Positions 15,040 to 24,125 of a stretch of 64,000 nucleotides of DNA are shown piece after piece. Each line of letters opens with the position of its first letter. Positions within the stretch are counted from its first letter, which is position 1. The position numbers were made by a program, and so were the translations under genes. The DNA is taken from IMG/VR virus record IMGVR_UViG_3300004463_000226, positions 124,001 to 188,000 of that record. One strand, given 5' to 3'. The notes beneath the pieces were generated by a model. That model was not told the origin of the DNA. It was given only the letters and a program-made list of their open reading frames with translations, and ran no database searches.

Positions 15040-15090
15040 TCTGATCTCTCCAATCCTAACATTAATATGAAGGGGATGTTAATATAGATA

Positions 15091-15118
15091 AGATACAGTA
15101 CCAAACGGTACTGTATCT
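15091..15118 (-). terminator. terminator after polymerase operon
   Basis: agatacagtacc-aaac-ggtactgtatct. Confidence 0.75.
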
Positions 15119-15126
15119 CTACATTT

Positions 15127-15414
15127 TTATTTTACTTCTTTAACTAGATGAATTGGTAATAAATTAGCGATGCGTTGCTCAAATACGAACTCCAATGCTT
15201 CAACTACCCTTCTAACATCATTTATATTATTTATATTATCTGTATTAATGGTATATAGCTTCGGTGGCTGAACAATTCCTACTTTAATACCCCTCTGTGC
15301 ATATTCATATATTATTTGCGCATTACTCTTATCTTTATACCAGGAATCCCCTGGTCTTTCTTCAGGAGACTCACCTTCAACATATGGTTTAAATGGATTG
15401 TCTTCACTCATCAT
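15127..15414 (-). CDS. hypothetical protein
   Basis: ORF with SD GGAGGA after the polymerase gene. Confidence 0.7.
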   Translation of the reverse strand: MMSEDNPFKPYVEGESPEERPGDSWYKDKSNAQIIYEYAQRGIKVGIVQPPKLYTINTDNINNINDVRRVVEALEFVFEQRIANLLPIHLVKEVK

Positions 15415-15423
15415 TATTCCTCC

Positions 15424-17361
15424 TTATACTCGTAAGATATTTGTAAAATATTTCTTATCAGAAGCTTTGATAGTTTCAACACCTAATGCCTCTAATACCG
15501 AATAGAAACGTGAAATGTTATCATTCACAATTGTATCATAGTCGATATAAGGCAATAACCATTCAGGTATTGATTCAACACTTCTTGGGATTGCAATGAT
15601 TTGAACACCTTTCTCAACAAGCTTCTTATTATTACCATTAAACACATGCTTCATCAATCTATCATACGCTTCTGGGAAAACTTTCTTTAAAGGTTCAATA
15701 TGCTCAGGCTTTGTCATCTTAACTTTGACAATATCAATCTTCTCAGGTAACTGTATAGCAAGACTTGGATAGATGATATTCCAAGCAAGTACTCCTCGAA
15801 CACCTTGCTCCTTATAAGGGTCTTTGTATGCTTCTATCTCTTTAACTGACTTAGGAATTAAGAAACTCTTTTCACCTTTATGTAGAGATTCCTGAATTAT
15901 TCCCTCAAGCTTTTCTAGTTCCCTTAATACAGATGAGATACTAATATCATCTTTATATAACAATTCCTTCTTCACTAGATTAATAAAGTAAGCTTTTGTT
16001 TCCTCCCGTGTAGATGACTTAACAAAATCCATTCCTTTGATATCAATCTTCTCAGGATAAATCTCATGACCCTCACGAAGACGCACACTACTGATATATC
16101 TCTTCTTACTACCAGAAAGTATCAATCGTGTAAATAAGAATTCGTTCTTCATGTTAATCTTAGGTCTGAATTCTTTCAAGATATTTGAATCCTTGGTATA
16201 CTTCTTAAGTACATCTGTAACCATGTTTGTCAGGAAATAACACATCATATTGATACTGATGAATCGTAACTCCATAGGATCTCTTTCTAATAGATGGTCG
16301 TTTACAGATATAACATTGCGATTGATAAACTTAACCCAAGGATCTAAATTCAACATGTTTGAGTCTGTGTCTACAGTTACTACAACTTTACGTTTATCAT
16401 TCTTCAGACGTTGAATACGTCCAAAAGGTGAATGATTATAGAATACAAACTCTTTATAATAGTCCCATAAGTCCTCTAAGTTACTTTGCACATTCTTAGG
16501 AACCTTATTTGGATCCTTAAATGACTCTGTTTTATTAACAGCTGTGACTATCTTATATCGTATCTTACGAAGATATGAGAACTTATAGATGTTATTCTTA
16601 AAGTAGATACGATTAATAATATTCTGAGGTAAACTCATCAAGTACTCAAATAAGATAAATTCATACTCAGGTTTAAACTCATAGAAAGAATCTGCCAGAT
16701 GGTCAATTAGTTTCTCAATAGAAACATTGGGCAAGAAACCATCATCTTTAATATGTTTCTCCCTACGAACATTTTCCAAAAACATCATACAATCATCAAG
16801 GTCAATAAACGGTACGTTGTTTGCTAAGAATGCTTCAAACGCTTGTTGCGTTGTACTGATAAGCGATTGACCTGTTGCTGTTACTGATGTTGCGGTATAA
16901 AGATTAAAGAAGTTAGATGTTGGTGCACCAGATGCTCCATAATATGAGTTAGCATTAATCTTTTCTGTTAATTGCATTCGGTCTAATGCCATGTAATCAT
17001 AAGAGCCTTCTTGATGATCTGGTAACTGATTCTTATAAAACTTACGTAACTTAAGGAAGTTATCTAACATGACAGCGGCAGGATTTAATACTTGGTCTTG
17101 ATTCCAGAAGAATACTCCAAAACCTGCTGCTATTGCATTGGTATTTCTAAACCAATCAATCATTGATAATAAATCTACATCTATGTCTAAGTGATTATAG
17201 TTATTATGCATAGATGCTTTTGGATTCACTAGCCGTTCTTTAATAACTTCGTCCAGGAATCCTTTTATTTCTTTCTTTTTTAATTCAGGATACATCGTTG
17301 TGAATATCCTAGTGTAGTGCTTTTTCCAATCTTCGAGAAATATATGACTCTTCTCTCCCAT
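15424..17361 (-). CDS. family B DNA polymerase, C-terminal subunit (motifs B and C)
   Basis: KINANSYYGA, VTVDTDSN, KKRY, KGMDFVKSS; lacks exonuclease and motif A. Confidence 0.92.
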   Translation of the reverse strand: MGEKSHIFLEDWKKHYTRIFTTMYPELKKKEIKGFLDEVIKERLVNPKASMHNNYNHLDIDVDLLSMIDWFRNTNAIAAGFGVFFWNQDQVLNPAAVMLDNFLKLRKFYKNQLPDHQEGSYDYMALDRMQLTEKINANSYYGASGAPTSNFFNLYTATSVTATGQSLISTTQQAFEAFLANNVPFIDLDDCMMFLENVRREKHIKDDGFLPNVSIEKLIDHLADSFYEFKPEYEFILFEYLMSLPQNIINRIYFKNNIYKFSYLRKIRYKIVTAVNKTESFKDPNKVPKNVQSNLEDLWDYYKEFVFYNHSPFGRIQRLKNDKRKVVVTVDTDSNMLNLDPWVKFINRNVISVNDHLLERDPMELRFISINMMCYFLTNMVTDVLKKYTKDSNILKEFRPKINMKNEFLFTRLILSGSKKRYISSVRLREGHEIYPEKIDIKGMDFVKSSTREETKAYFINLVKKELLYKDDISISSVLRELEKLEGIIQESLHKGEKSFLIPKSVKEIEAYKDPYKEQGVRGVLAWNIIYPSLAIQLPEKIDIVKVKMTKPEHIEPLKKVFPEAYDRLMKHVFNGNNKKLVEKGVQIIAIPRSVESIPEWLLPYIDYDTIVNDNISRFYSVLEALGVETIKASDKKYFTNILRV

Positions 17362-17373
17362 GTGTTTTCTCCT

Positions 17374-17901
17374 TTACCATCTATATCTAGGCATAATTAT
17401 CTCCTTGATTTCATTGGATATTTTCTTATCCCTCCATTCATAGTACGGCTTATCTTCCAACATTATCATTGCATATCTAAGCATATCTTTTGCCGATACA
17501 TTGACAAATACATACATCTTATTATCATCGAACTTAACTAAATCTTTTTCATCAACTATGTCGATGTAGGTATTGACATATACTTCATTATCATCAACCC
17601 AACCATCATTTACTATATCACCATATTCCTCACCCACCCTTGTGAATGAATATTCACCTTCATCATCTAACGTATCTAGGAACCTCATAAAGTTCTTTAT
17701 TTCAGGAAATCCACCATGAAAGTCATACCACTTGACATGATCAAACTTCATAAGAATATTTCCCGTTGATTTAAACATTTGTTTTTCAGTTTCTAATAAT
17801 AAATTTTCCTCATCGGGAATATTATTTTCCTTCATCCATATTAAACCTTTATGATATGATTGCTGTGTTAATACTATAGCAACCTCACTCGTATAACCCA
17901 T
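17374..17901 (-). CDS. hypothetical protein (paralog of 19449-20090)
   Basis: Start moved to MGYTSEV (SD GGAGAG); shared YxSxV...WMKxxxIP...GNIL. Confidence 0.75.
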
Positions 17902-18139
17902 CAGTCTTACTCTCCATTTCCTTTTCTTTATTAGAATCATCAATTATTTCTACACATAAATTAACACATTCATCACAAATATAAACATTAGGTCCAGCAA
18001 TCAACTTCTGAACTTGATGTTGATTTTTACCACAGAAAGAGCAGTGTAGAGTATCAAACTTACCCTGCATTTTTAATAAATTATCATAAGCCTTTGCTTT
18101 ATCAACTACTTCATGAAACTGCTGTTGTAAGTCTGACAT
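17885..18139 (-). CDS. stand-alone ClpX C4-type zinc-binding domain protein
   Basis: [34 protein letters not shown] is near-canonical ClpX ZBD; no AAA domain; start moved to MSDLQQ. Confidence 0.9.
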
Positions 18140-18140
18140 A

Positions 18141-18731
18141 TTAACCCAACTCCACTGTAATTTTATTGTCTTTCTTATATTCTTTGATAGCTTTTTCAAG
18201 GGCTAATACATTTCGTTGAGTAAGGAATGCAGTAGCGGAATTACCATGTTCAGTATCTTGAATTCTTAAACTCAGGTCACCCCATTCATCTTCTAGAGTA
18301 ATTAACTCATCACACTCACCTATTGTTTTGAGATATAGTTTAGTCTTTTGGTCATTATGAGAATTGACAAAATCATCAACGACTTCTTCCTCATCATTAT
18401 CAGGGAATTCAATTAACTTATCTAACGTGAATGTTGGATCTCTAAACTCACCTTTAATTAAAGTATCAACCACTCCCATAACTAGAACAAATTCATCTTT
18501 ATTAAGAGATGTGACTATAGTATTCAGTGTATTTAATGTTATAGCCATTGATTCAGCAGTATCTACAAATATCCTATGAAACATGAAATTACTAGCACCA
18601 GTTGTAATCTTAGCATCGCTCTTTGCGAAGATACTGTGTTTAGCATTAAATATTGCCTCGTTGTTAATTAACATTAATTTTCCAGCAGCTTCTTTCTTTA
18701 ATAATAAATTTACTTTCACAGTTTGAATCAT
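18141..18731 (-). CDS. hypothetical early protein
   Basis: ORF, SD AGGAGG, early motif 18768-18777. Confidence 0.75.
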
Positions 18732-18767
18732 CTAGATTCCTCCTAATTATTTATTTGATACCTCTCT

Positions 18768-18777
18768 ATAATATATA
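18768..18777 (-). promoter_or_regulatory. putative early promoter motif
   Basis: Heads operon containing ClpX-ZBD and polymerase C-subunit. Confidence 0.7.
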
Positions 18778-18843: not shown

Positions 18844-18867
18844 AAACCATAGGAAACCCTATGGTTT
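18844..18867 (-). terminator. terminator
   Basis: aaaccatagg-aaac-cctatggttt, A-tract on left. Confidence 0.75.
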
Positions 18868-19447
18868 ATTTAATGTACACATCTACAAGATTACCATCTT
18901 CATAGACAATTGTTCTACCTGAATGTGTAGTAGATGTAATTTTGAGATAGTACTCATCTTTTGATCCTACACAATGAACAAAATTTTTCGTTATCGTAGA
19001 TACAGTAAAGCATTCTCCAGCTTCAGTTATAGTCCGTTCAAATATCAAATTATCACAACCAGTTCTATCTGTATAATCATTTGATATTAATATATTATTT
19101 TTAGCAACTACCTGATTCTCCCAGTATCTTTTTAATCCTCGTTCATGCATAGCATCAGTTAATATTAATTCTATTTTTGCTTCTGTTATCATATCTATAG
19201 ATGATTGATATACTTCTTCATGAGATTCATTTAATGTATCGGGATCACCATAATCGGAAAGGAATTGACCTAGACTACTATATAATAGTGAAGCCCCTTT
19301 AACATTGAGCTCCAACTCAAATTCAGGATGATCTGCATGAGAATCTAATTTAAAGGTTTCATCAACCTCATTAGTCCACATATACATTTTATTTCCTTTT
19401 TTATCATAAAACCCACCCATTGGTATTTCTTTACGTTTCTTACTCAT
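18866..19447 (-). CDS. hypothetical protein
   Basis: Start moved to MSKKRK (SD GAGGAGG). Confidence 0.75.
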   Translation of the reverse strand: MSKKRKEIPMGGFYDKKGNKMYMWTNEVDETFKLDSHADHPEFELELNVKGASLLYSSLGQFLSDYGDPDTLNESHEEVYQSSIDMITEAKIELILTDAMHERGLKRYWENQVVAKNNILISNDYTDRTGCDNLIFERTITEAGECFTVSTITKNFVHCVGSKDEYYLKITSTTHSGRTIVYEDGNLVDVYIK

Positions 19448-19448
19448 C

Positions 19449-20090
19449 TTATTCCTCCTCCTCTTCTTCATCGTTTTTGAATTTATCAGGATCCATGAAG
19501 CTATCTATCAAACGCCCAAGCTTTCCGACTCCACCCCAAAATTCAAATGTTAATTTCATCTCACCATTCTCATCCGCTAAAGATTCTCCAAACTTTGTAG
19601 TCTTTATTGATAATTCAAAGAATCCTTTTTTTCTATCGCCTCTTATGTGTATAGGTGTTTTATTGGCATCGTATACAACATCACTTATGTAGTCAGGATT
19701 ATCTTTATTCTGTATAAGCTCACCCGTTGTTGTAAATCTTCTTGCCTTTCCAGTTGCCTGTATAGTAGTTGAATATTGAACAGACACATCATCTAATGTA
19801 CCAAATGTAGATATACCTGTTCGATGTAATACAACTATCTTAAAATCTTCTGACTCTTCATCATCTTCGTTAACAAATCTAAGTAGAGTAAGTAATGAAT
19901 TATCATTGTCACTACCTCTTACTCTAGCACTAAATAGAATATTACCCTTCTCTGTTTGCTGGACATATCCTTCAATTCTGTTGAATATATTTCGATTCTC
20001 AGGTATTTCCTCTGATTTCATCCATTTCCAGCACTTATCAAATAATTTTGGTTTCATCATAACTGTTACATACGAAGCATATAATGCCAT
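19449..20090 (-). CDS. hypothetical early protein (paralog of 17374-17901)
   Basis: ORF, SD GGAGGT, early motif 20124-20133. Confidence 0.75.
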   Translation of the reverse strand: MALYASYVTVMMKPKLFDKCWKWMKSEEIPENRNIFNRIEGYVQQTEKGNILFSARVRGSDNDNSLLTLLRFVNEDDEESEDFKIVVLHRTGISTFGTLDDVSVQYSTTIQATGKARRFTTTGELIQNKDNPDYISDVVYDANKTPIHIRGDRKKGFFELSIKTTKFGESLADENGEMKLTFEFWGGVGKLGRLIDSFMDPDKFKNDEEEEEE

Positions 20091-20701: not shown

Positions 20702-20741
20702 AAATAATACCATATAGGAAATAACCTATATGGTATTATTT
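20702..20741. terminator. bidirectional terminator
   Basis: aaataataccatatagg-aaataa-cctatatggtattattt between convergent genes. Confidence 0.8.
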
Positions 20742-22139: not shown

Positions 22140-24125
22140 ATGGAAAAAAATGTGGTAGACATTATTAATCTATTTAGTAACAATGTAATTAGTATTGAGG
22201 ACATGACAGAGACAAGGGAAATATATAATGGGTCAATAGAGAAATATTATGACTTCATTAAACAAGGATTTGAACATGTTGAATTAAGAGAATGTCCTGT
22301 TCATTTTAGATTCTTCGATAAAGAAGATCAAATGATCCATACGTTACAACTCAGACACTTTGTAACAAACTTAATGTTCTGGGAGCCAATTGTACGTATG
22401 GGTGTTTATGATGTGATAGATGAAAGCTATATCGTAGATTGTACTAAACTATCTAATCGTCTTATCAAGAATTATATTGACGAGAAGATCATTATACCTT
22501 TTAAGACAGAAGTAGAGAATGTCAAGCTAAATAAAGTAATTCATGATATGATTCACAATTTAGGTAGAATCTCTACCGATTTTAATATACTTCTAGGATT
22601 GTCAATGAACGTAGAAACATTCATTGATGTTGCTAATAAGAACGCTAGATTTAATGAAATCATCCGTACAACTATTGATGATTCAATGCAGCCAAATGAG
22701 ATTGAAAGTTATCTGGATAAACTTACTAAGGAACAGATGGGTATCTTAATGGTTGATGATAACATGCTTAAACCTATACTGAAATCTGGTACAGGTATTA
22801 AGGCTGGACAGTTTAAAGAGTTTGCTGTTAACGCAGGATTAAAACCAGATATTGATGGTAATACAATTCCTATTGCTGTAAACTCTAACTTTATCGTTGG
22901 TGGTTTGAATAACATTACCAACTACTATATCGACTCATTGGGTGGGCGTAAATCCATCATTATGAATAAAACAGTAATGGGTCGCTCAGGACACTTTGCT
23001 CGGATGGTTATGTTATTATCATCTACAGTAAGAATGAGAAAAGATGAGAAAGACTGTGGCACAGTACATTCTTCTAAGATTAATGTAAGAACAGAAGAGC
23101 ATTTGTATCGTCTAAAAGGCAGATATTATAGATTGATGCATGACCGACAGTATAGGTTATTAAAAGGAACCGAAAGACATTTGATTGGTAGAGATATATT
23201 GATTCGTACTCCAGCCAAATGTGCATCTAAAGAAATTTGTAAAACTTGCTACGGTCATCTATATTATACTAATCGTGACCTCGAATCTATTGGAGGCTTC
23301 GCTGGTGCAAAGATAACAGAGCCATTATCTCAGTCTATTCTATCTTCTAAACACTTACTTACAACACAGTCAGAGAAGATTGAGTTCAATGAAGAATTCT
23401 ATTCATTCTTCAAGCTTAATGCCAATGAGATTATGATTAACGGCGACAATGAGAATATCGAAAGATATAGCATTGTTCTTATCCGTGAAAATATTCAAAC
23501 TATTGATGAGTTTGATGAAGCAGAGTTCAACAGCTACGTTGATACATTCCATATCAAAGATAAAAAGACTGGTGACTTGATTGAGATCCAAGAAAAACAT
23601 ATCAAGGAGCTTTATATCGCACCAGATGTAAAAGAACTTATGGTTCGTCCAAAAGGAAATAAAGAGATTCTTGAGATTGATCTTTCTAAAGTCGGTGATG
23701 ATGATAGAATCTTCGTTGTCGAAATCTCTAATAACGAATTAACAAAACCACTATACAACATCATGTATCTACTTAATAACAAAAAGCGTCGTGAAGAAGC
23801 TGGAGTATTTACAATTGATGAAATGATTCAACGTATGCTAGACCTGCTGATTGAATCTAAGATTGATGCTGATTCAGTACACGGTGAGTTATTAATACGT
23901 CCATTGATTCGTAATTCTAATAACGTTCTGAAGATTCCTGATTTCAAACGTTACAATGCAAGTCGTGAGTATGAAGTATTGACTGTAGAAGGTGCATTAC
24001 AACGCCATCCATCAGTACTAATCAGCTTATCTTTCCAAGACATTGGAAGACAATTAACTAATCCACTGACGTTTAAGAAGAGAGAAACATCATTTATTGA
24101 TCCTTTCTTCCAAGAACGTCCATAG
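22140..24125 (+). CDS. non-virion RNA polymerase beta-prime C-terminal subunit (AR9 gp154 / phiKZ gp74-like)
   Basis: Bridge helix KTVMGRSGHFARMV, Zn site DCGT...CASKEICKTCYG, trigger loop EPLSQSILSSKH, C-terminal SVLISLSFQD; no NADFDGD. Confidence 0.9.
   Translation: MEKNVVDIINLFSNNVISIEDMTETREIYNGSIEKYYDFIKQGFEHVELRECPVHFRFFDKEDQMIHTLQLRHFVTNLMFWEPIVRMGVYDVIDESYIVDCTKLSNRLIKNYIDEKIIIPFKTEVENVKLNKVIHDMIHNLGRISTDFNILLGLSMNVETFIDVANKNARFNEIIRTTIDDSMQPNEIESYLDKLTKEQMGILMVDDNMLKPILKSGTGIKAGQFKEFAVNAGLKPDIDGNTIPIAVNSNFIVGGLNNITNYYIDSLGGRKSIIMNKTVMGRSGHFARMVMLLSSTVRMRKDEKDCGTVHSSKINVRTEEHLYRLKGRYYRLMHDRQYRLLKGTERHLIGRDILIRTPAKCASKEICKTCYGHLYYTNRDLESIGGFAGAKITEPLSQSILSSKHLLTTQSEKIEFNEEFYSFFKLNANEIMINGDNENIERYSIVLIRENIQTIDEFDEAEFNSYVDTFHIKDKKTGDLIEIQEKHIKELYIAPDVKELMVRPKGNKEILEIDLSKVGDDDRIFVVEISNNELTKPLYNIMYLLNNKKRREEAGVFTIDEMIQRMLDLLIESKIDADSVHGELLIRPLIRNSNNVLKIPDFKRYNASREYEVLTVEGALQRHPSVLISLSFQDIGRQLTNPLTFKKRETSFIDPFFQERP

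What the first reader, a model, noticed from the sequence alone, without database searches (positions are those of the whole stretch)
17885..18139. Stand-alone ClpX zinc-binding domain in an early operon
Seen: an 84-aa protein made of a short helix plus a near-canonical ClpX ZBD, upstream of the DNA polymerase C-subunit. Known: the ClpX ZBD dimerises and docks adaptors/substrates (needed for Spx turnover in Bacillus). Inference: it could heterodimerise with host ClpX or titrate adaptors to rewire ClpXP proteolysis, for example stress response, sporulation or antitoxin turnover.
Basis: partly seen in the sequence, partly recalled or inferred. Interest (0 to 1): 0.6.

Follow-up and report, generated by a model that had tools for sequence, protein, structure and literature searches.

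The report
Phage copy of ClpX docking domain
A giant soil phage related to Bacillus phage AR9 carries, behind an early promoter, a small gene that copies only the zinc-binding docking domain of the host protein-unfolding machine ClpX. It belongs to an unstudied family found in phages and prophages of Bacillus-like bacteria, and it probably acts as a decoy that blunts part of host ClpXP protein degradation.

Summary
Window 17885-18139 (-) encodes an 84-aa protein with three parts: an N-terminal helix, a near-canonical ClpX zinc-binding domain (ZBD; Pfam PF06689, E=1e-20) and an acidic tail.

- **Stand-alone gene.** The complete 234-kb phage genome has no ClpX AAA+ module and no ClpP.
- **The phage.** It is a distant AR9/PBS1-like jumbo phage.
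- **Early expression (inferred).** The gene is second in a tight unit (196-aa gene, ZBD, 175-aa gene, DNA polymerase catalytic subunit, 95-aa gene). The unit follows TATATATTAT-N6-G, the AR9 virion-RNAP early promoter consensus.
- **New here: the helix is not incidental.** It carries a conserved KAxKYDxL motif. This defines a family of 67-118-aa proteins in prophages of Bacillus, Paenibacillus, Brevibacillus, Virgibacillus and Siminovitchia, and in several unrelated phage types. Members usually sit among early or accessory genes and share no conserved neighbour.
- **Mimicry.** The family keeps the ClpX ZBD residues that form the adaptor/substrate docking patch (F35, I65 and others).
- **Precedent.** Published work shows that isolated ZBD added in trans inhibits adaptor-mediated ClpXP degradation.

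The best reading is a dimeric decoy of the ClpX N-domain. This is inferred, not shown. I found no paper describing such phage proteins. Interest is moderate.

The parts
17885..18139 (-). Gene for the 84-aa stand-alone ClpX-ZBD protein (P0001), stop codon included
   Evidence: ORF and translation; Pfam PF06689 at E=1e-20; the only ZBD in the 234-kb genome
18065..18136 (-). N-terminal amphipathic helix (residues 2-25) with the family motif KAxKYDxL. K14, A15 and Y18 are invariant; K17, D19 and L21 are nearly so. The hydrophobic residues follow a 3-4 repeat.
   Evidence: AF2 secondary structure; 39-sequence family alignment A2
17936..18049 (-). ClpX-type zinc-binding domain (residues 31-68). C33, C36, C55 and C58 are the zinc ligands. 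F35, I65, L31, A48 and Y53 correspond to the hydrophobic docking patch of E. coli ClpX.
   Evidence: PMC7804408 for the F16/I46 patch
17888..17935 (-). Acidic C-terminal tail (residues 69-84), comparable to the acidic ZBD-AAA+ linker of ClpX. Its last codons overlap the RBS and start of the next gene.
   Evidence: sequence
18150..18153 (-). GGAG ribosome-binding site, 10 nt before the ATG and inside the end of the upstream gene
   Evidence: sequence read
18761..18777 (-). Early-promoter-like element TATATATTAT-N6-G; the predicted transcription start is the G at 18761. It lies 30 nt before the ATG (18731) of the first gene of the unit.
   Evidence: AR9 early consensus AAATATATATTAT-(6N)-G in PMC5312081
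18844..18867 (-). Terminator-like hairpin followed by a T-run; it closes the preceding unit, upstream of the promoter
18141..18731 (-). First gene of the unit: 196 aa, no family match. Its stop lies 1 nt before the ZBD start.
17374..17901 (-). Third gene: 175 aa from ATG 17901, no family match. It overlaps the ZBD gene by 17 nt. It is a weak paralogue of the 213-aa gene at 19449-20090.
15424..17361 (-). Family-B DNA polymerase catalytic subunit (645 aa); AR9 gp152 homologue at 33% identity
15090..15119 (-). Terminator-like hairpin after the 95-aa gene (15127-15414); probable end of the unit

Best explanation

Shown:
- The ZBD is near-canonical, about 74% identical to the E. coli ZBD and 68% to the Bacilli ZBD consensus over 38 residues.
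- It belongs to a conserved family of small proteins built as a KAxKYDxL helix, a ZBD and an acidic tail. The family occurs in phages and prophages of Bacillales.
- The family keeps the ClpX residues of the hydrophobic docking patch.

Inferred:
- The gene is transcribed early by the injected virion RNA polymerase, together with the DNA polymerase gene.
- The protein dimerises as the ClpX ZBD does, with the heptad-patterned N-helix adding a coiled-coil clamp that favours homodimers.
- The free dimer competes with the three ZBD dimers on each ClpX hexamer for proteins that must dock there (adaptors and N-domain-dependent substrates). This would selectively slow ZBD-dependent ClpXP degradation while leaving pore-recognised substrates such as ssrA-tagged proteins untouched.
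- The beneficiary would be phage proteins otherwise degraded, or a host regulator such as Spx whose stabilisation helps the phage.
For: - Domain identity and fold.
- Truly stand-alone: no AAA_2 and no ClpP in the complete genome. NCBIfam ClpX models match only the first ~50 positions, at 54-56 bits against cut-offs of 359-371.
- Family: 39 aligned members with invariant K14, A15, Y18, C33, F35, C36, G49, I54, C55 and C62. Named members come from Bacillus, Siminovitchia, Brevibacillus, Virgibacillus and Paenibacillus. The nearest ESM Atlas cluster is 60% viral.
- Docking surface kept: ClpX consensus residues are held at 85% or more in the family at L31, F35, K38, Q40, K45, L46, A48, Y53, I54, E57, E64 and I65. 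Some ClpX-invariant positions (K32, Q42, R44, G51, E67) are free to vary.
- Literature: the F16/I46 region binds lambda O, trigger factor, SspB and RssB (PMC7804408). ZBD alone inhibits RssB-mediated sigma-S turnover (PMC7226468).
- Host-directed: the ZBD gene is the only gene shared by 11 family loci. Contexts are early or accessory regions, once overlapping a Tad2-like anti-defence gene.
- Retained in the closest relatives, which share 68% polymerase identity.
- Early promoter: 44 motif sites against about 6 expected. Of these, 39 lie just upstream of an RBS, start codon and ORF, and 36 have the N6-G. The motif matches the AR9 consensus (PMC5312081), and AR9 g152 has an annotated early promoter.
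- Precedent for a Bacillus phage retuning a Clp ATPase: SPO1 Gp53 with ClpC (PMC6873191).
Against: - No binding or activity data exist. The homodimer prediction did not reach its mark, so it counts neither way.
- No ZBD-docking adaptor is established for Bacillales. To my knowledge YjbH acts on Spx rather than docking on ClpX, so what would be titrated is unknown.
- The closest orthologue (G001/G010) has Ser in place of the fourth zinc cysteine. It is not preceded by the early motif, and it lies about 6 kb from the polymerase on the other strand.
- AR9/PBS1 and the 30%-identity jumbo relatives lack the gene, so it is dispensable for this phage type.
- The N-helix word also occurs in unrelated coiled-coil phage proteins, so it may be a generic structural element.
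- The host is not identified.
Confidence: 0.45

Rival explanations
1. Poison subunit. The phage ZBD forms mixed dimers with the ZBD of newly made host ClpX. Each mixed dimer leaves a ClpX N-domain unable to pair, which distorts the hexamer's N-domain layer and changes or blocks ClpX function.
For: The ZBD core, including residues conserved in all ClpX ZBDs, is kept. ZBDs dimerise (PMC7226468 section 3.2; 1OVX is a dimer).
Against: By established knowledge, ClpX ZBD dimers are stable and pre-formed, so exchange would need co-translational capture. Jumbo phages of this type reduce host mRNA early (PMC5312081 abstract), leaving little new ClpX. The conserved heptad helix is absent from ClpX and would favour homodimers (inference). 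No test was possible.
Confidence: 0.15
2. Adaptor or degrader. The conserved N-helix grips a specific host or phage protein, and the ZBD part brings it to ClpX, or to a ZBD-binding partner such as trigger factor. The result would be to promote degradation or remodelling of that target rather than inhibit it.
For: The helix is as conserved as the ZBD (K14, A15 and Y18 invariant), as expected of a second binding surface. SPO1 Gp53 is an adaptor-like phage protein for ClpC (PMC6873191).
Against: No known adaptor docks through a ZBD-ZBD contact. The helix word recurs in generic coiled coils. No conserved neighbour suggests a cargo.
Confidence: 0.12
3. The ZBD fold is used as a general zinc-ribbon interaction module on a target unrelated to ClpXP, for example a transcription or replication factor. 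Other ZBD-containing proteins, such as cyanobacterial sigma factors, use the fold this way.
For: PF06689 occurs fused to other domains (EAL, sigma factors and others). The more distant relatives G002/G003 carry a much more diverged ZBD with a different N-terminus next to radical-SAM genes.
Against: This family's ZBD stays 68-74% identical to authentic ClpX ZBDs at surface positions, far more than the fold requires. The protein has a net charge of about -6, which makes nucleic-acid binding unlikely (counted).
Confidence: 0.2
4. A decaying remnant of a captured clpX gene, or part of a split phage ClpX, with no function of its own.
For: Many database 'stand-alone ZBDs' are truncated ClpX fragments at contig ends or frameshifts. 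Some jumbo phages encode a full ClpX (PMC7824862; Atu_ph07 and Phosso).
Against: The frame is intact and has its own RBS. The family is conserved across unrelated phages with a specific added helix. There is no AAA+ or ClpP part anywhere in the complete genome. The sequence is identical in contigs of four metagenome runs.
Confidence: 0.02

Closest known systems
[quoted passage not shown]
   Same: Same fold, the same four cysteines and the same hydrophobic docking-patch residues. Identity is 70-74% to the E. coli domain in structural alignment. An acidic stretch follows the domain, as in ClpX.
   Different: There is no AAA+ ATPase and no ClpP-binding part. A conserved 25-residue N-terminal helix is added. 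Several ClpX-invariant surface positions (K32, Q42, R44, G51, E67 in Bacilli) are not conserved.
Isolated recombinant ClpX ZBD used as a competitor in vitro (PMC7226468; Wojtyra et al. 2003 as cited in PMC7804408)
   Same: A free ZBD dimer that competes with ClpX for adaptor docking and inhibits adaptor-mediated degradation. This is exactly the mechanism proposed here.
   Different: That is a laboratory fragment of E. coli ClpX. This is a natural phage gene, with an extra helix, in a Gram-positive setting where the ZBD ligands are poorly known.
Phage-encoded modulators of host AAA+ proteases: SPO1 Gp53 on ClpC (PMC6873191); from my own knowledge, T4 PinA and T7 Gp4.5 on Lon
   Same: Small early phage proteins that retune host regulated proteolysis. 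Gp53 is from a Bacillus phage host-takeover module.
   Different: Those proteins are not copies of a domain of their target. Gp53 binds ClpC and behaves like an adaptor. Here the proposed action is mimicry of the protease's own docking domain.
Anti-adaptors of ClpXP pathways (IraD/IraM/IraP for RssB, PMC6546054; YirB for YjbH, PMC6057675)
   Same: Small proteins that stabilise a ClpXP substrate by interfering with delivery rather than with the protease core.
   Different: Anti-adaptors bind one adaptor through unrelated folds. A ZBD decoy would compete for every ZBD-docking ligand at once.
Other stand-alone ZBD ORFs of phages: PHROG 6797, 12435, 5259 and 20296; P88 (110 aa), Pseudomonas phage BUCT566 (65 aa), Caulobacter phage Cr30
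   Same: Small phage proteins consisting essentially of a ClpX-type ZBD, in early or accessory regions. All are uncharacterised and often mis-named.
   Different: They have different or no N-terminal extensions and come from proteobacterial hosts. The KAxKYDxL helix is specific to the family described here. That family was not found in any cultured Bacillales phage among 50,697 records.

Membership tests
ClpX-type zinc-binding domain (Pfam PF06689 zf-C4_ClpX) | Profile score above the curated gathering threshold | tested here: met
   73.8 bits against a cut-off of 27, E=1e-20; 74.6 bits in the genome scan
ClpX-type zinc-binding domain (Pfam PF06689 zf-C4_ClpX) | C4 zinc site: CxxC, 18 residues, CxxC | tested here: met
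   C33, C36, C55 and C58 align with E. coli C14, C17, C36 and C39. The closest orthologue has Ser at the fourth position.
ClpX-type zinc-binding domain (Pfam PF06689 zf-C4_ClpX) | Fold: beta-hairpin plus C-terminal helix, superposable on solved ZBD structures | tested here: met
   AF2 model pLDDT about 90 over the domain. Foldseek to 2DS5-2DS8 and 1OVX gives rmsd 0.5-1.8 A at probability 1.00.
ClpX-type zinc-binding domain (Pfam PF06689 zf-C4_ClpX) | Constitutive dimerisation and zinc binding | tested here: inconclusive
   The homodimer prediction scored 0.36, below the mark of 0.42, so there is no verdict. Zinc binding is not testable with these tools.
ClpX-type zinc-binding domain (Pfam PF06689 zf-C4_ClpX) | Hydrophobic ligand-docking patch (E. 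coli F16, I46 and neighbours) | tested here: met
   F35 is invariant and I65 is at 90% in the family. L31, A48 and Y53 are at 87-90%. The patch is defined in PMC7804408.
ClpX unfoldase (NCBIfam TIGR00382 / NF003745) | AAA+ ATPase module with pore loops and ClpP-binding IGF loop; full-length model score | tested here: not met
   Only model positions 4-54 match, at 54-56 bits against cut-offs of 359-371. No AAA_2 match anywhere in the genome. It is not a ClpX.
Helix-ZBD family of Bacillales phages and prophages (defined here, alignment A2; ESM Atlas cluster 'ClpX C4-type zinc finger protein family') | Size 67-118 aa; N-terminal helix with KAxKYDxL; short linker; ZBD; acidic tail | tested here: met
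   P0001 aligns end to end and carries K14, A15, Y18, D19 and L21, with A17 in place of K. Atlas structural match covers residues 3-77 at TM 0.67/0.74.
Phage-encoded modulators of host AAA+ proteases (functional class) | Physical binding to, or competition with, a host protease component and a change in substrate stability | not testable with these tools
   This needs pull-down and degradation assays. Only indirect support is available (PMC7226468).
AR9-type early (virion-RNAP) genes | Promoter AAATATATATTAT-(6N)-G upstream; transcript present minutes after infection without protein synthesis | tested here: inconclusive
   The motif is present at 18777-18761 and is genome-wide enriched and positioned like a promoter. 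No RNA data exist for this phage.

The most novel reading that the evidence does not exclude
Phages and prophages of Bacillales carry a dedicated, widespread 'anti-ClpX N-domain' protein. It would be a natural dimeric decoy that copies the protease's own docking domain and adds a coiled-coil clamp. Its effect would be to shut off N-domain-dependent ClpXP proteolysis early in infection or induction. That would protect phage replication or recombination proteins, or disarm ClpXP-dependent host responses, possibly including defence systems, given its place beside a Tad2-like gene in one phage. This would be the first viral inhibitor of ClpXP to act by domain mimicry.
Probability: 0.35. Interest if true: 0.7.

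Novelty: new variant of a known kind. Interest (0 to 1): 0.55.

Why it matters
ClpXP controls stress responses, development, toxin-antitoxin balance and the fate of several phage proteins. Phage tools are known that act on Lon, FtsH and ClpC. In the library searched I found none for ClpX.

A natural free ZBD would be a selective inhibitor of N-domain-dependent ClpXP proteolysis. It could serve as a probe to find which Gram-positive substrates and adaptors need the ZBD, which is still an open list.

The family is small, easy to express and present in cultivable Bacillales as prophage genes. The hypothesis can therefore be tested directly even though this phage itself is known only from rhizosphere metagenomes.

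Tried and rejected
- **Homodimer prediction** (complex prediction, two copies with alignment A2): score 0.36 against a mark of 0.42, controls 0.00-0.01. The tool's verdict is 'no answer', so it is not used as evidence either way.
- **Megablast** of the 7-kb neighbourhood against 50,697 phage records: no match.
- **Scan of species genomes** with peptide words of P0001: it returned only N-termini of ordinary ClpX in tig-clpP-clpX context and gave no taxonomic signal for a donor. The apparent alignment of the helix there was read-through of the spacer upstream of clpX.
- **Link to radical-SAM enzymes**, seen next to the ZBD gene in three relatives: the own genome has no homologue, so it is not part of this gene's function here.
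- **Split phage ClpX or a phage ClpP partner**: none in the genome.
- **Conserved neighbour analysis** over 11 family loci: nothing is shared except the ZBD gene.
- **Survey of 301 Bacilli genomes**: it mostly re-found ClpX. Only 10 genomes had a second match, so it gives a rough rarity (about 3%) and nothing more.
- **RNA evidence**: no RNA run holds the stretch. Contigs of four rhizosphere runs are identical to the window, so there is no variation from which to judge selection.
- **Literature**: five searches found no study of phage stand-alone ZBD proteins. The Zhang & Zuber 2007 paper on the ZBD requirement for Spx proteolysis is not held and is cited only by its title in PMC5506225.
- **The helix as a ZBD-binding (XB-like) peptide**: it does not resemble the LKxh / SspB-tail consensus reported in PMC7226468, so I dropped this idea.

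Full report
**1. The observation**

Window 17885-18139 on the minus strand is an open frame of 84 codons plus a stop, starting at an ATG.
- A longer reading from a TTG at 18199 would overlap the upstream gene by 59 nt and add residues that no relative has, so the ATG is the start.
- GGAG lies 10 nt upstream of the ATG.
- The upstream 196-aa gene stops 1 nt before the ATG.
- The downstream 175-aa gene starts 17 nt before the stop (sequence). The three genes are packed as one translational block.

Evidence that the domain is a ClpX ZBD:
- Pfam gives zf-C4_ClpX at E=1e-20, 73.8 bits against a threshold of 27.
- The best solved relatives are the E. coli ClpX ZBD structures 1OVX and 2DS5-8.
- An AlphaFold2 model built on 39 family sequences (mean pLDDT 81.9) shows helix 2-25, a short linker, a beta-hairpin and helix 56-79.
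- The domain part superposes on the ZBD crystal structures at 0.5-0.9 A with 70-74% identity.

One small correction: one gene separates this gene from the polymerase.

**2. The genome**

The window is bases 124001-188000 of a complete 234,335-bp virus record with terminal repeats. It has about 33% G+C.
- The neighbouring 645-aa protein is a divergent family-B DNA polymerase, and a 661-aa protein at 22140-24125 is a split multisubunit RNA polymerase piece.
- The nearest named relatives of the polymerase are Bacillus phages PBS1, AR9 and Goe21 (33% identity). Next come Bacillus pumilus and Staphylococcus jumbo phages.
- The local order (polymerase, small virion protein, non-virion RNAP beta' piece) is that of AR9 g152-g154.
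- The same DNA occurs in at least a dozen rhizosphere metagenome runs. It is identical in the four runs that I laid.

This is a distant AR9-like jumbo phage, most likely of a soil member of the Bacillales. The host itself is not identified.

**3. Timing**

The decamer TATATATTAT occurs 44 times in the genome, against about 6 expected from a first-order Markov model.
- 39 of the 44 sites are followed within 110 nt, on the same strand, by an RBS, a start codon and an ORF of 40 aa or more. Random positions give 6.6 +/- 2.2.
- 36 of the 44 have G after six further bases.
- This matches the experimentally mapped early promoter of AR9, AAATATATATTAT-(6N)-G(+1), which is read by the injected virion RNA polymerase without new protein synthesis (PMC5312081). 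AR9's own polymerase gene g152 has such a promoter (PMC5312081).

One site sits at 18777-18761. It lies just after a terminator-like hairpin (18867-18844) and 30 nt before the first gene of the block. Another hairpin follows the 95-aa gene at 15119-15090.

The predicted unit is therefore: promoter, 196-aa gene, ZBD gene, 175-aa gene, DNA polymerase, 95-aa gene, terminator. 'Early operon' is supported by analogy. There are no RNA data.

**4. It is truly stand-alone**

The genome has one ZBD. It has no AAA_2 module and no ClpP. The controls for those searches ring in 13-14 of 14 reference genomes. NCBIfam ClpX models match only their first ~50 positions and fall far below threshold. The gene is neither a ClpX nor half of a split one.

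**5. A family, and the helix matters**

Word searches returned many truncated ClpX fragments. They also returned a coherent set of 67-118-aa proteins that align with P0001 from end to end.
- In the 39-sequence alignment A2, the N-terminal helix carries invariant K14, A15 and Y18, and nearly invariant K17, D19 and L21. I write this motif as KAxKYDxL.
- The hydrophobic residues of the helix are spaced 3-4-3-4.
- About eight variable residues follow, then the ZBD, then an acidic tail.

Named members come from Bacillus sp. RO3, Siminovitchia fordii, Brevibacillus porteri, Virgibacillus kapii and Paenibacillus barcinonensis.

Contexts differ from locus to locus:
- In Virgibacillus the gene lies in a prophage early region, between a Sak recombinase and DnaB/primase genes.
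- In Paenibacillus, and in a 134-kb contig, it lies among long runs of small genes.
- In a 150-kb phage it overlaps the start of a Tad2-like (anti-Thoeris family) gene.
- In another phage it follows nucleotide-metabolism genes and a sigma factor.
- Four more members came from a DNA pattern scan of viral contigs.

Across 11 loci nothing but the ZBD gene is shared.

Distribution:
- The ESM Atlas places P0001 in a 56-member, mostly viral cluster, with a structural match over residues 3-77.
- In a sample of 301 Bacilli genomes only 10 had a second ZBD match besides ClpX.
- In 50,697 phage records no cultured Bacillales phage has the family.

Among relatives of this phage:
- The two closest (68% polymerase identity) have an orthologue at 51% identity, elsewhere in the genome.
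- Two at 56-57% identity have a much more diverged ZBD protein with a different N-terminus.
- Three complete genomes at about 30% identity, and AR9/PBS1, have none.

**6. What is conserved**

I compared the family with 20 Bacilli ClpX ZBDs taken from genomes.
- The family keeps the ClpX consensus at 85-100% at L31, C33, S34, F35, C36, G37, K38, Q40, K45, L46, A48, G49, Y53, I54, C55, E57, C58, C62, E64 and I65.
- Positions that are invariant in ClpX vary in the family or take another residue: K32 (H in the family), Q42, R44, G51 and E67.
- In E. coli numbering (subtract 19), F35 and I65 are F16 and I46. These mark the hydrophobic region that binds lambda O, trigger factor and the adaptors SspB and RssB (PMC7804408).

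The fold needs little more than the four cysteines. Keeping this surface across unrelated phages argues that the protein must still meet ClpX-ZBD partners: either the ligands of the patch, or another ZBD.

**7. Mechanism**

Published experiments show that the isolated ZBD dimerises. Added in trans, it inhibits RssB-mediated sigma-S degradation by ClpXP (PMC7226468, sections 3.1-3.2). [quoted passage not shown] In B. subtilis it is needed for Spx proteolysis (Zhang and Zuber 2007, cited by title in PMC5506225).

The simplest reading is that the phage makes, early, a free ZBD dimer that competes with ClpX for whatever docks on its N-domain.

I infer that the heptad helix adds a coiled-coil contact. 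The same nine-residue word is found in scaffold-like coiled-coil proteins and in small all-helical phage proteins. ClpX lacks this helix, so it would bias the protein towards homodimers. That makes a decoy more likely than a poison subunit.

The steps from 'mimic' to 'decoy' are inference. The only interaction prediction run gave no verdict.

The rivals are heterodimerisation with nascent ClpX, an adaptor role for the helix, a ClpX-unrelated use of the fold, and a dead remnant. They are listed with their tests. The remnant is effectively excluded.

**8. Points against over-reading**

- The closest orthologue has Ser for the fourth cysteine in two independent assemblies.
- That orthologue lacks the early motif and lies about 6 kb from the polymerase on the opposite strand, so neither early timing nor a tie to replication is conserved.
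- The gene is absent from AR9/PBS1.
- No ZBD-docking adaptor is established in Bacillales.

**9. Comparison and novelty**

The domain is known. Stand-alone ZBD ORFs are visible in databases:
- four PHROG families, all 'unknown' or loosely labelled 'protease';
- P88, BUCT566 and Cr30;
- UniRef names such as 'ClpX-type ZB domain-containing protein'.

One virome study even discarded a contig for carrying this domain (10.1101/608950). A jumbo-phage survey mentions only full-length ClpX, ClpA, ClpP and ClpS (PMC7824862). I found no functional study.

The closest functional precedents are SPO1 Gp53 on ClpC (PMC6873191) and cellular anti-adaptors. I therefore rate this as a new variant of a known kind (phage modulators of host AAA+ proteases), acting by copying the target's docking domain. 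The conserved helix is a feature not previously noted.

**Verdict**
- Observation: confirmed.
- Interpretation: partly supported.
- Mechanism confidence: about 0.45.
- Interest: 0.55.

Noticed in passing
window 5354(-), 6935(-), 13138(+), 14710(-), 18777(-), 20133(-), 21493(-), 22037(+), 51812(-), 54004(-), 58986(-); 44 sites in the whole genome: TATATATTAT-N6-G, identical to the AR9 virion-RNAP early promoter core, marks about 40 gene starts. It is often followed by a second conserved 5'-UTR word, AATCAATAATAA. This gives a ready map of the phage's early regulon.
   Followed up: partly
L026:606-1728 (G001); L027:848-2860 (G003); L028:238-2268 (G002): In three related jumbo phages the ZBD gene is adjacent to a radical-SAM gene: a 238-aa one in G001 and a 347-aa rSAM-SPASM one in G002/G003. 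In G002/G003 an Rv2179c-like 3'-5' exonuclease follows. The order differs between genomes, and the phage of this window has no radical-SAM homologue.
   Followed up: partly
L026:1438-1728(-) = P0132, also L029 (G010): The closest orthologue (51% identity) has Ser in place of the fourth zinc-binding cysteine, in two independent assemblies. The neighbouring conserved Cys (C62 equivalent) and a His follow. Zinc coordination may differ or be dispensable.
   Followed up: no
L113:8001-8638: In a 150-kb phage contig, the family member most similar to P0001 over the ZBD (70% identity) overlaps the start of a Tad2-like (PF11195, anti-Thoeris family) gene. Two YosH_C-domain genes lie nearby, so this may be an anti-defence or accessory island.
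   Followed up: no
proteins P0002, P0003, P0005, P0124, P0130, P0131 (metagenomic): Small proteins (101-137 aa) made of two ClpX-type ZBDs in tandem. They could be single-chain versions of the ZBD dimer. Many are named 'Clp ATPase subunit' by their sources although they have no ATPase.
   Followed up: no
L136, L138, L139, L141, L147, L148 (scaffold-like proteins); L140, L142, L143, L152, L153, L156 (52-64-aa proteins): The exact nine-residue word EKAKKYDEL of the family helix also occurs in coiled-coil scaffold-like proteins and at the N-terminus of small all-helical proteins of unrelated viral contigs. It is either a favoured coiled-coil word or a shared short motif.
   Followed up: partly
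window 17374-17901 with 19449-20090; 18141-18731 with 18866-19471: The four unknown genes flanking the ZBD gene form two weak paralogue pairs: 26% identity over 137 aa (E=3e-5) and 27% over 83 aa (E=2e-6). This suggests a local duplication into which the ZBD gene is inserted. None has a Pfam or PHROG match.
   Followed up: partly
window 15090-15119, 18844-18867, 20702-20741: Perfect hairpins that look like terminators on both strands (10-17 bp stems) sit at unit boundaries: 7 found against 2.5 expected in the 9-kb stretch.
   Followed up: no
L158:1480-1719 (Caulobacter phage Cr30, KF301602.1 81470-81709): The Cr30 ZBD ORF reads as one frame of about 70-79 aa. The record annotates only a 41-aa CDS for its 3' part and an overlapping upstream CDS in another frame. 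P88's 110-aa ZBD protein is named 'carboxylate-amine ligase'. Both look like annotation errors.
   Followed up: partly
L031:2594-3904 (Oscillospiraceae ClpX): The acidic linker after the ZBD of this ClpX ends in a TDGL word, like the tail of P0001. This may be chance or a trace of the domain's origin. Overall the ZBD shows no closer affinity to any one bacterial group.
   Followed up: no
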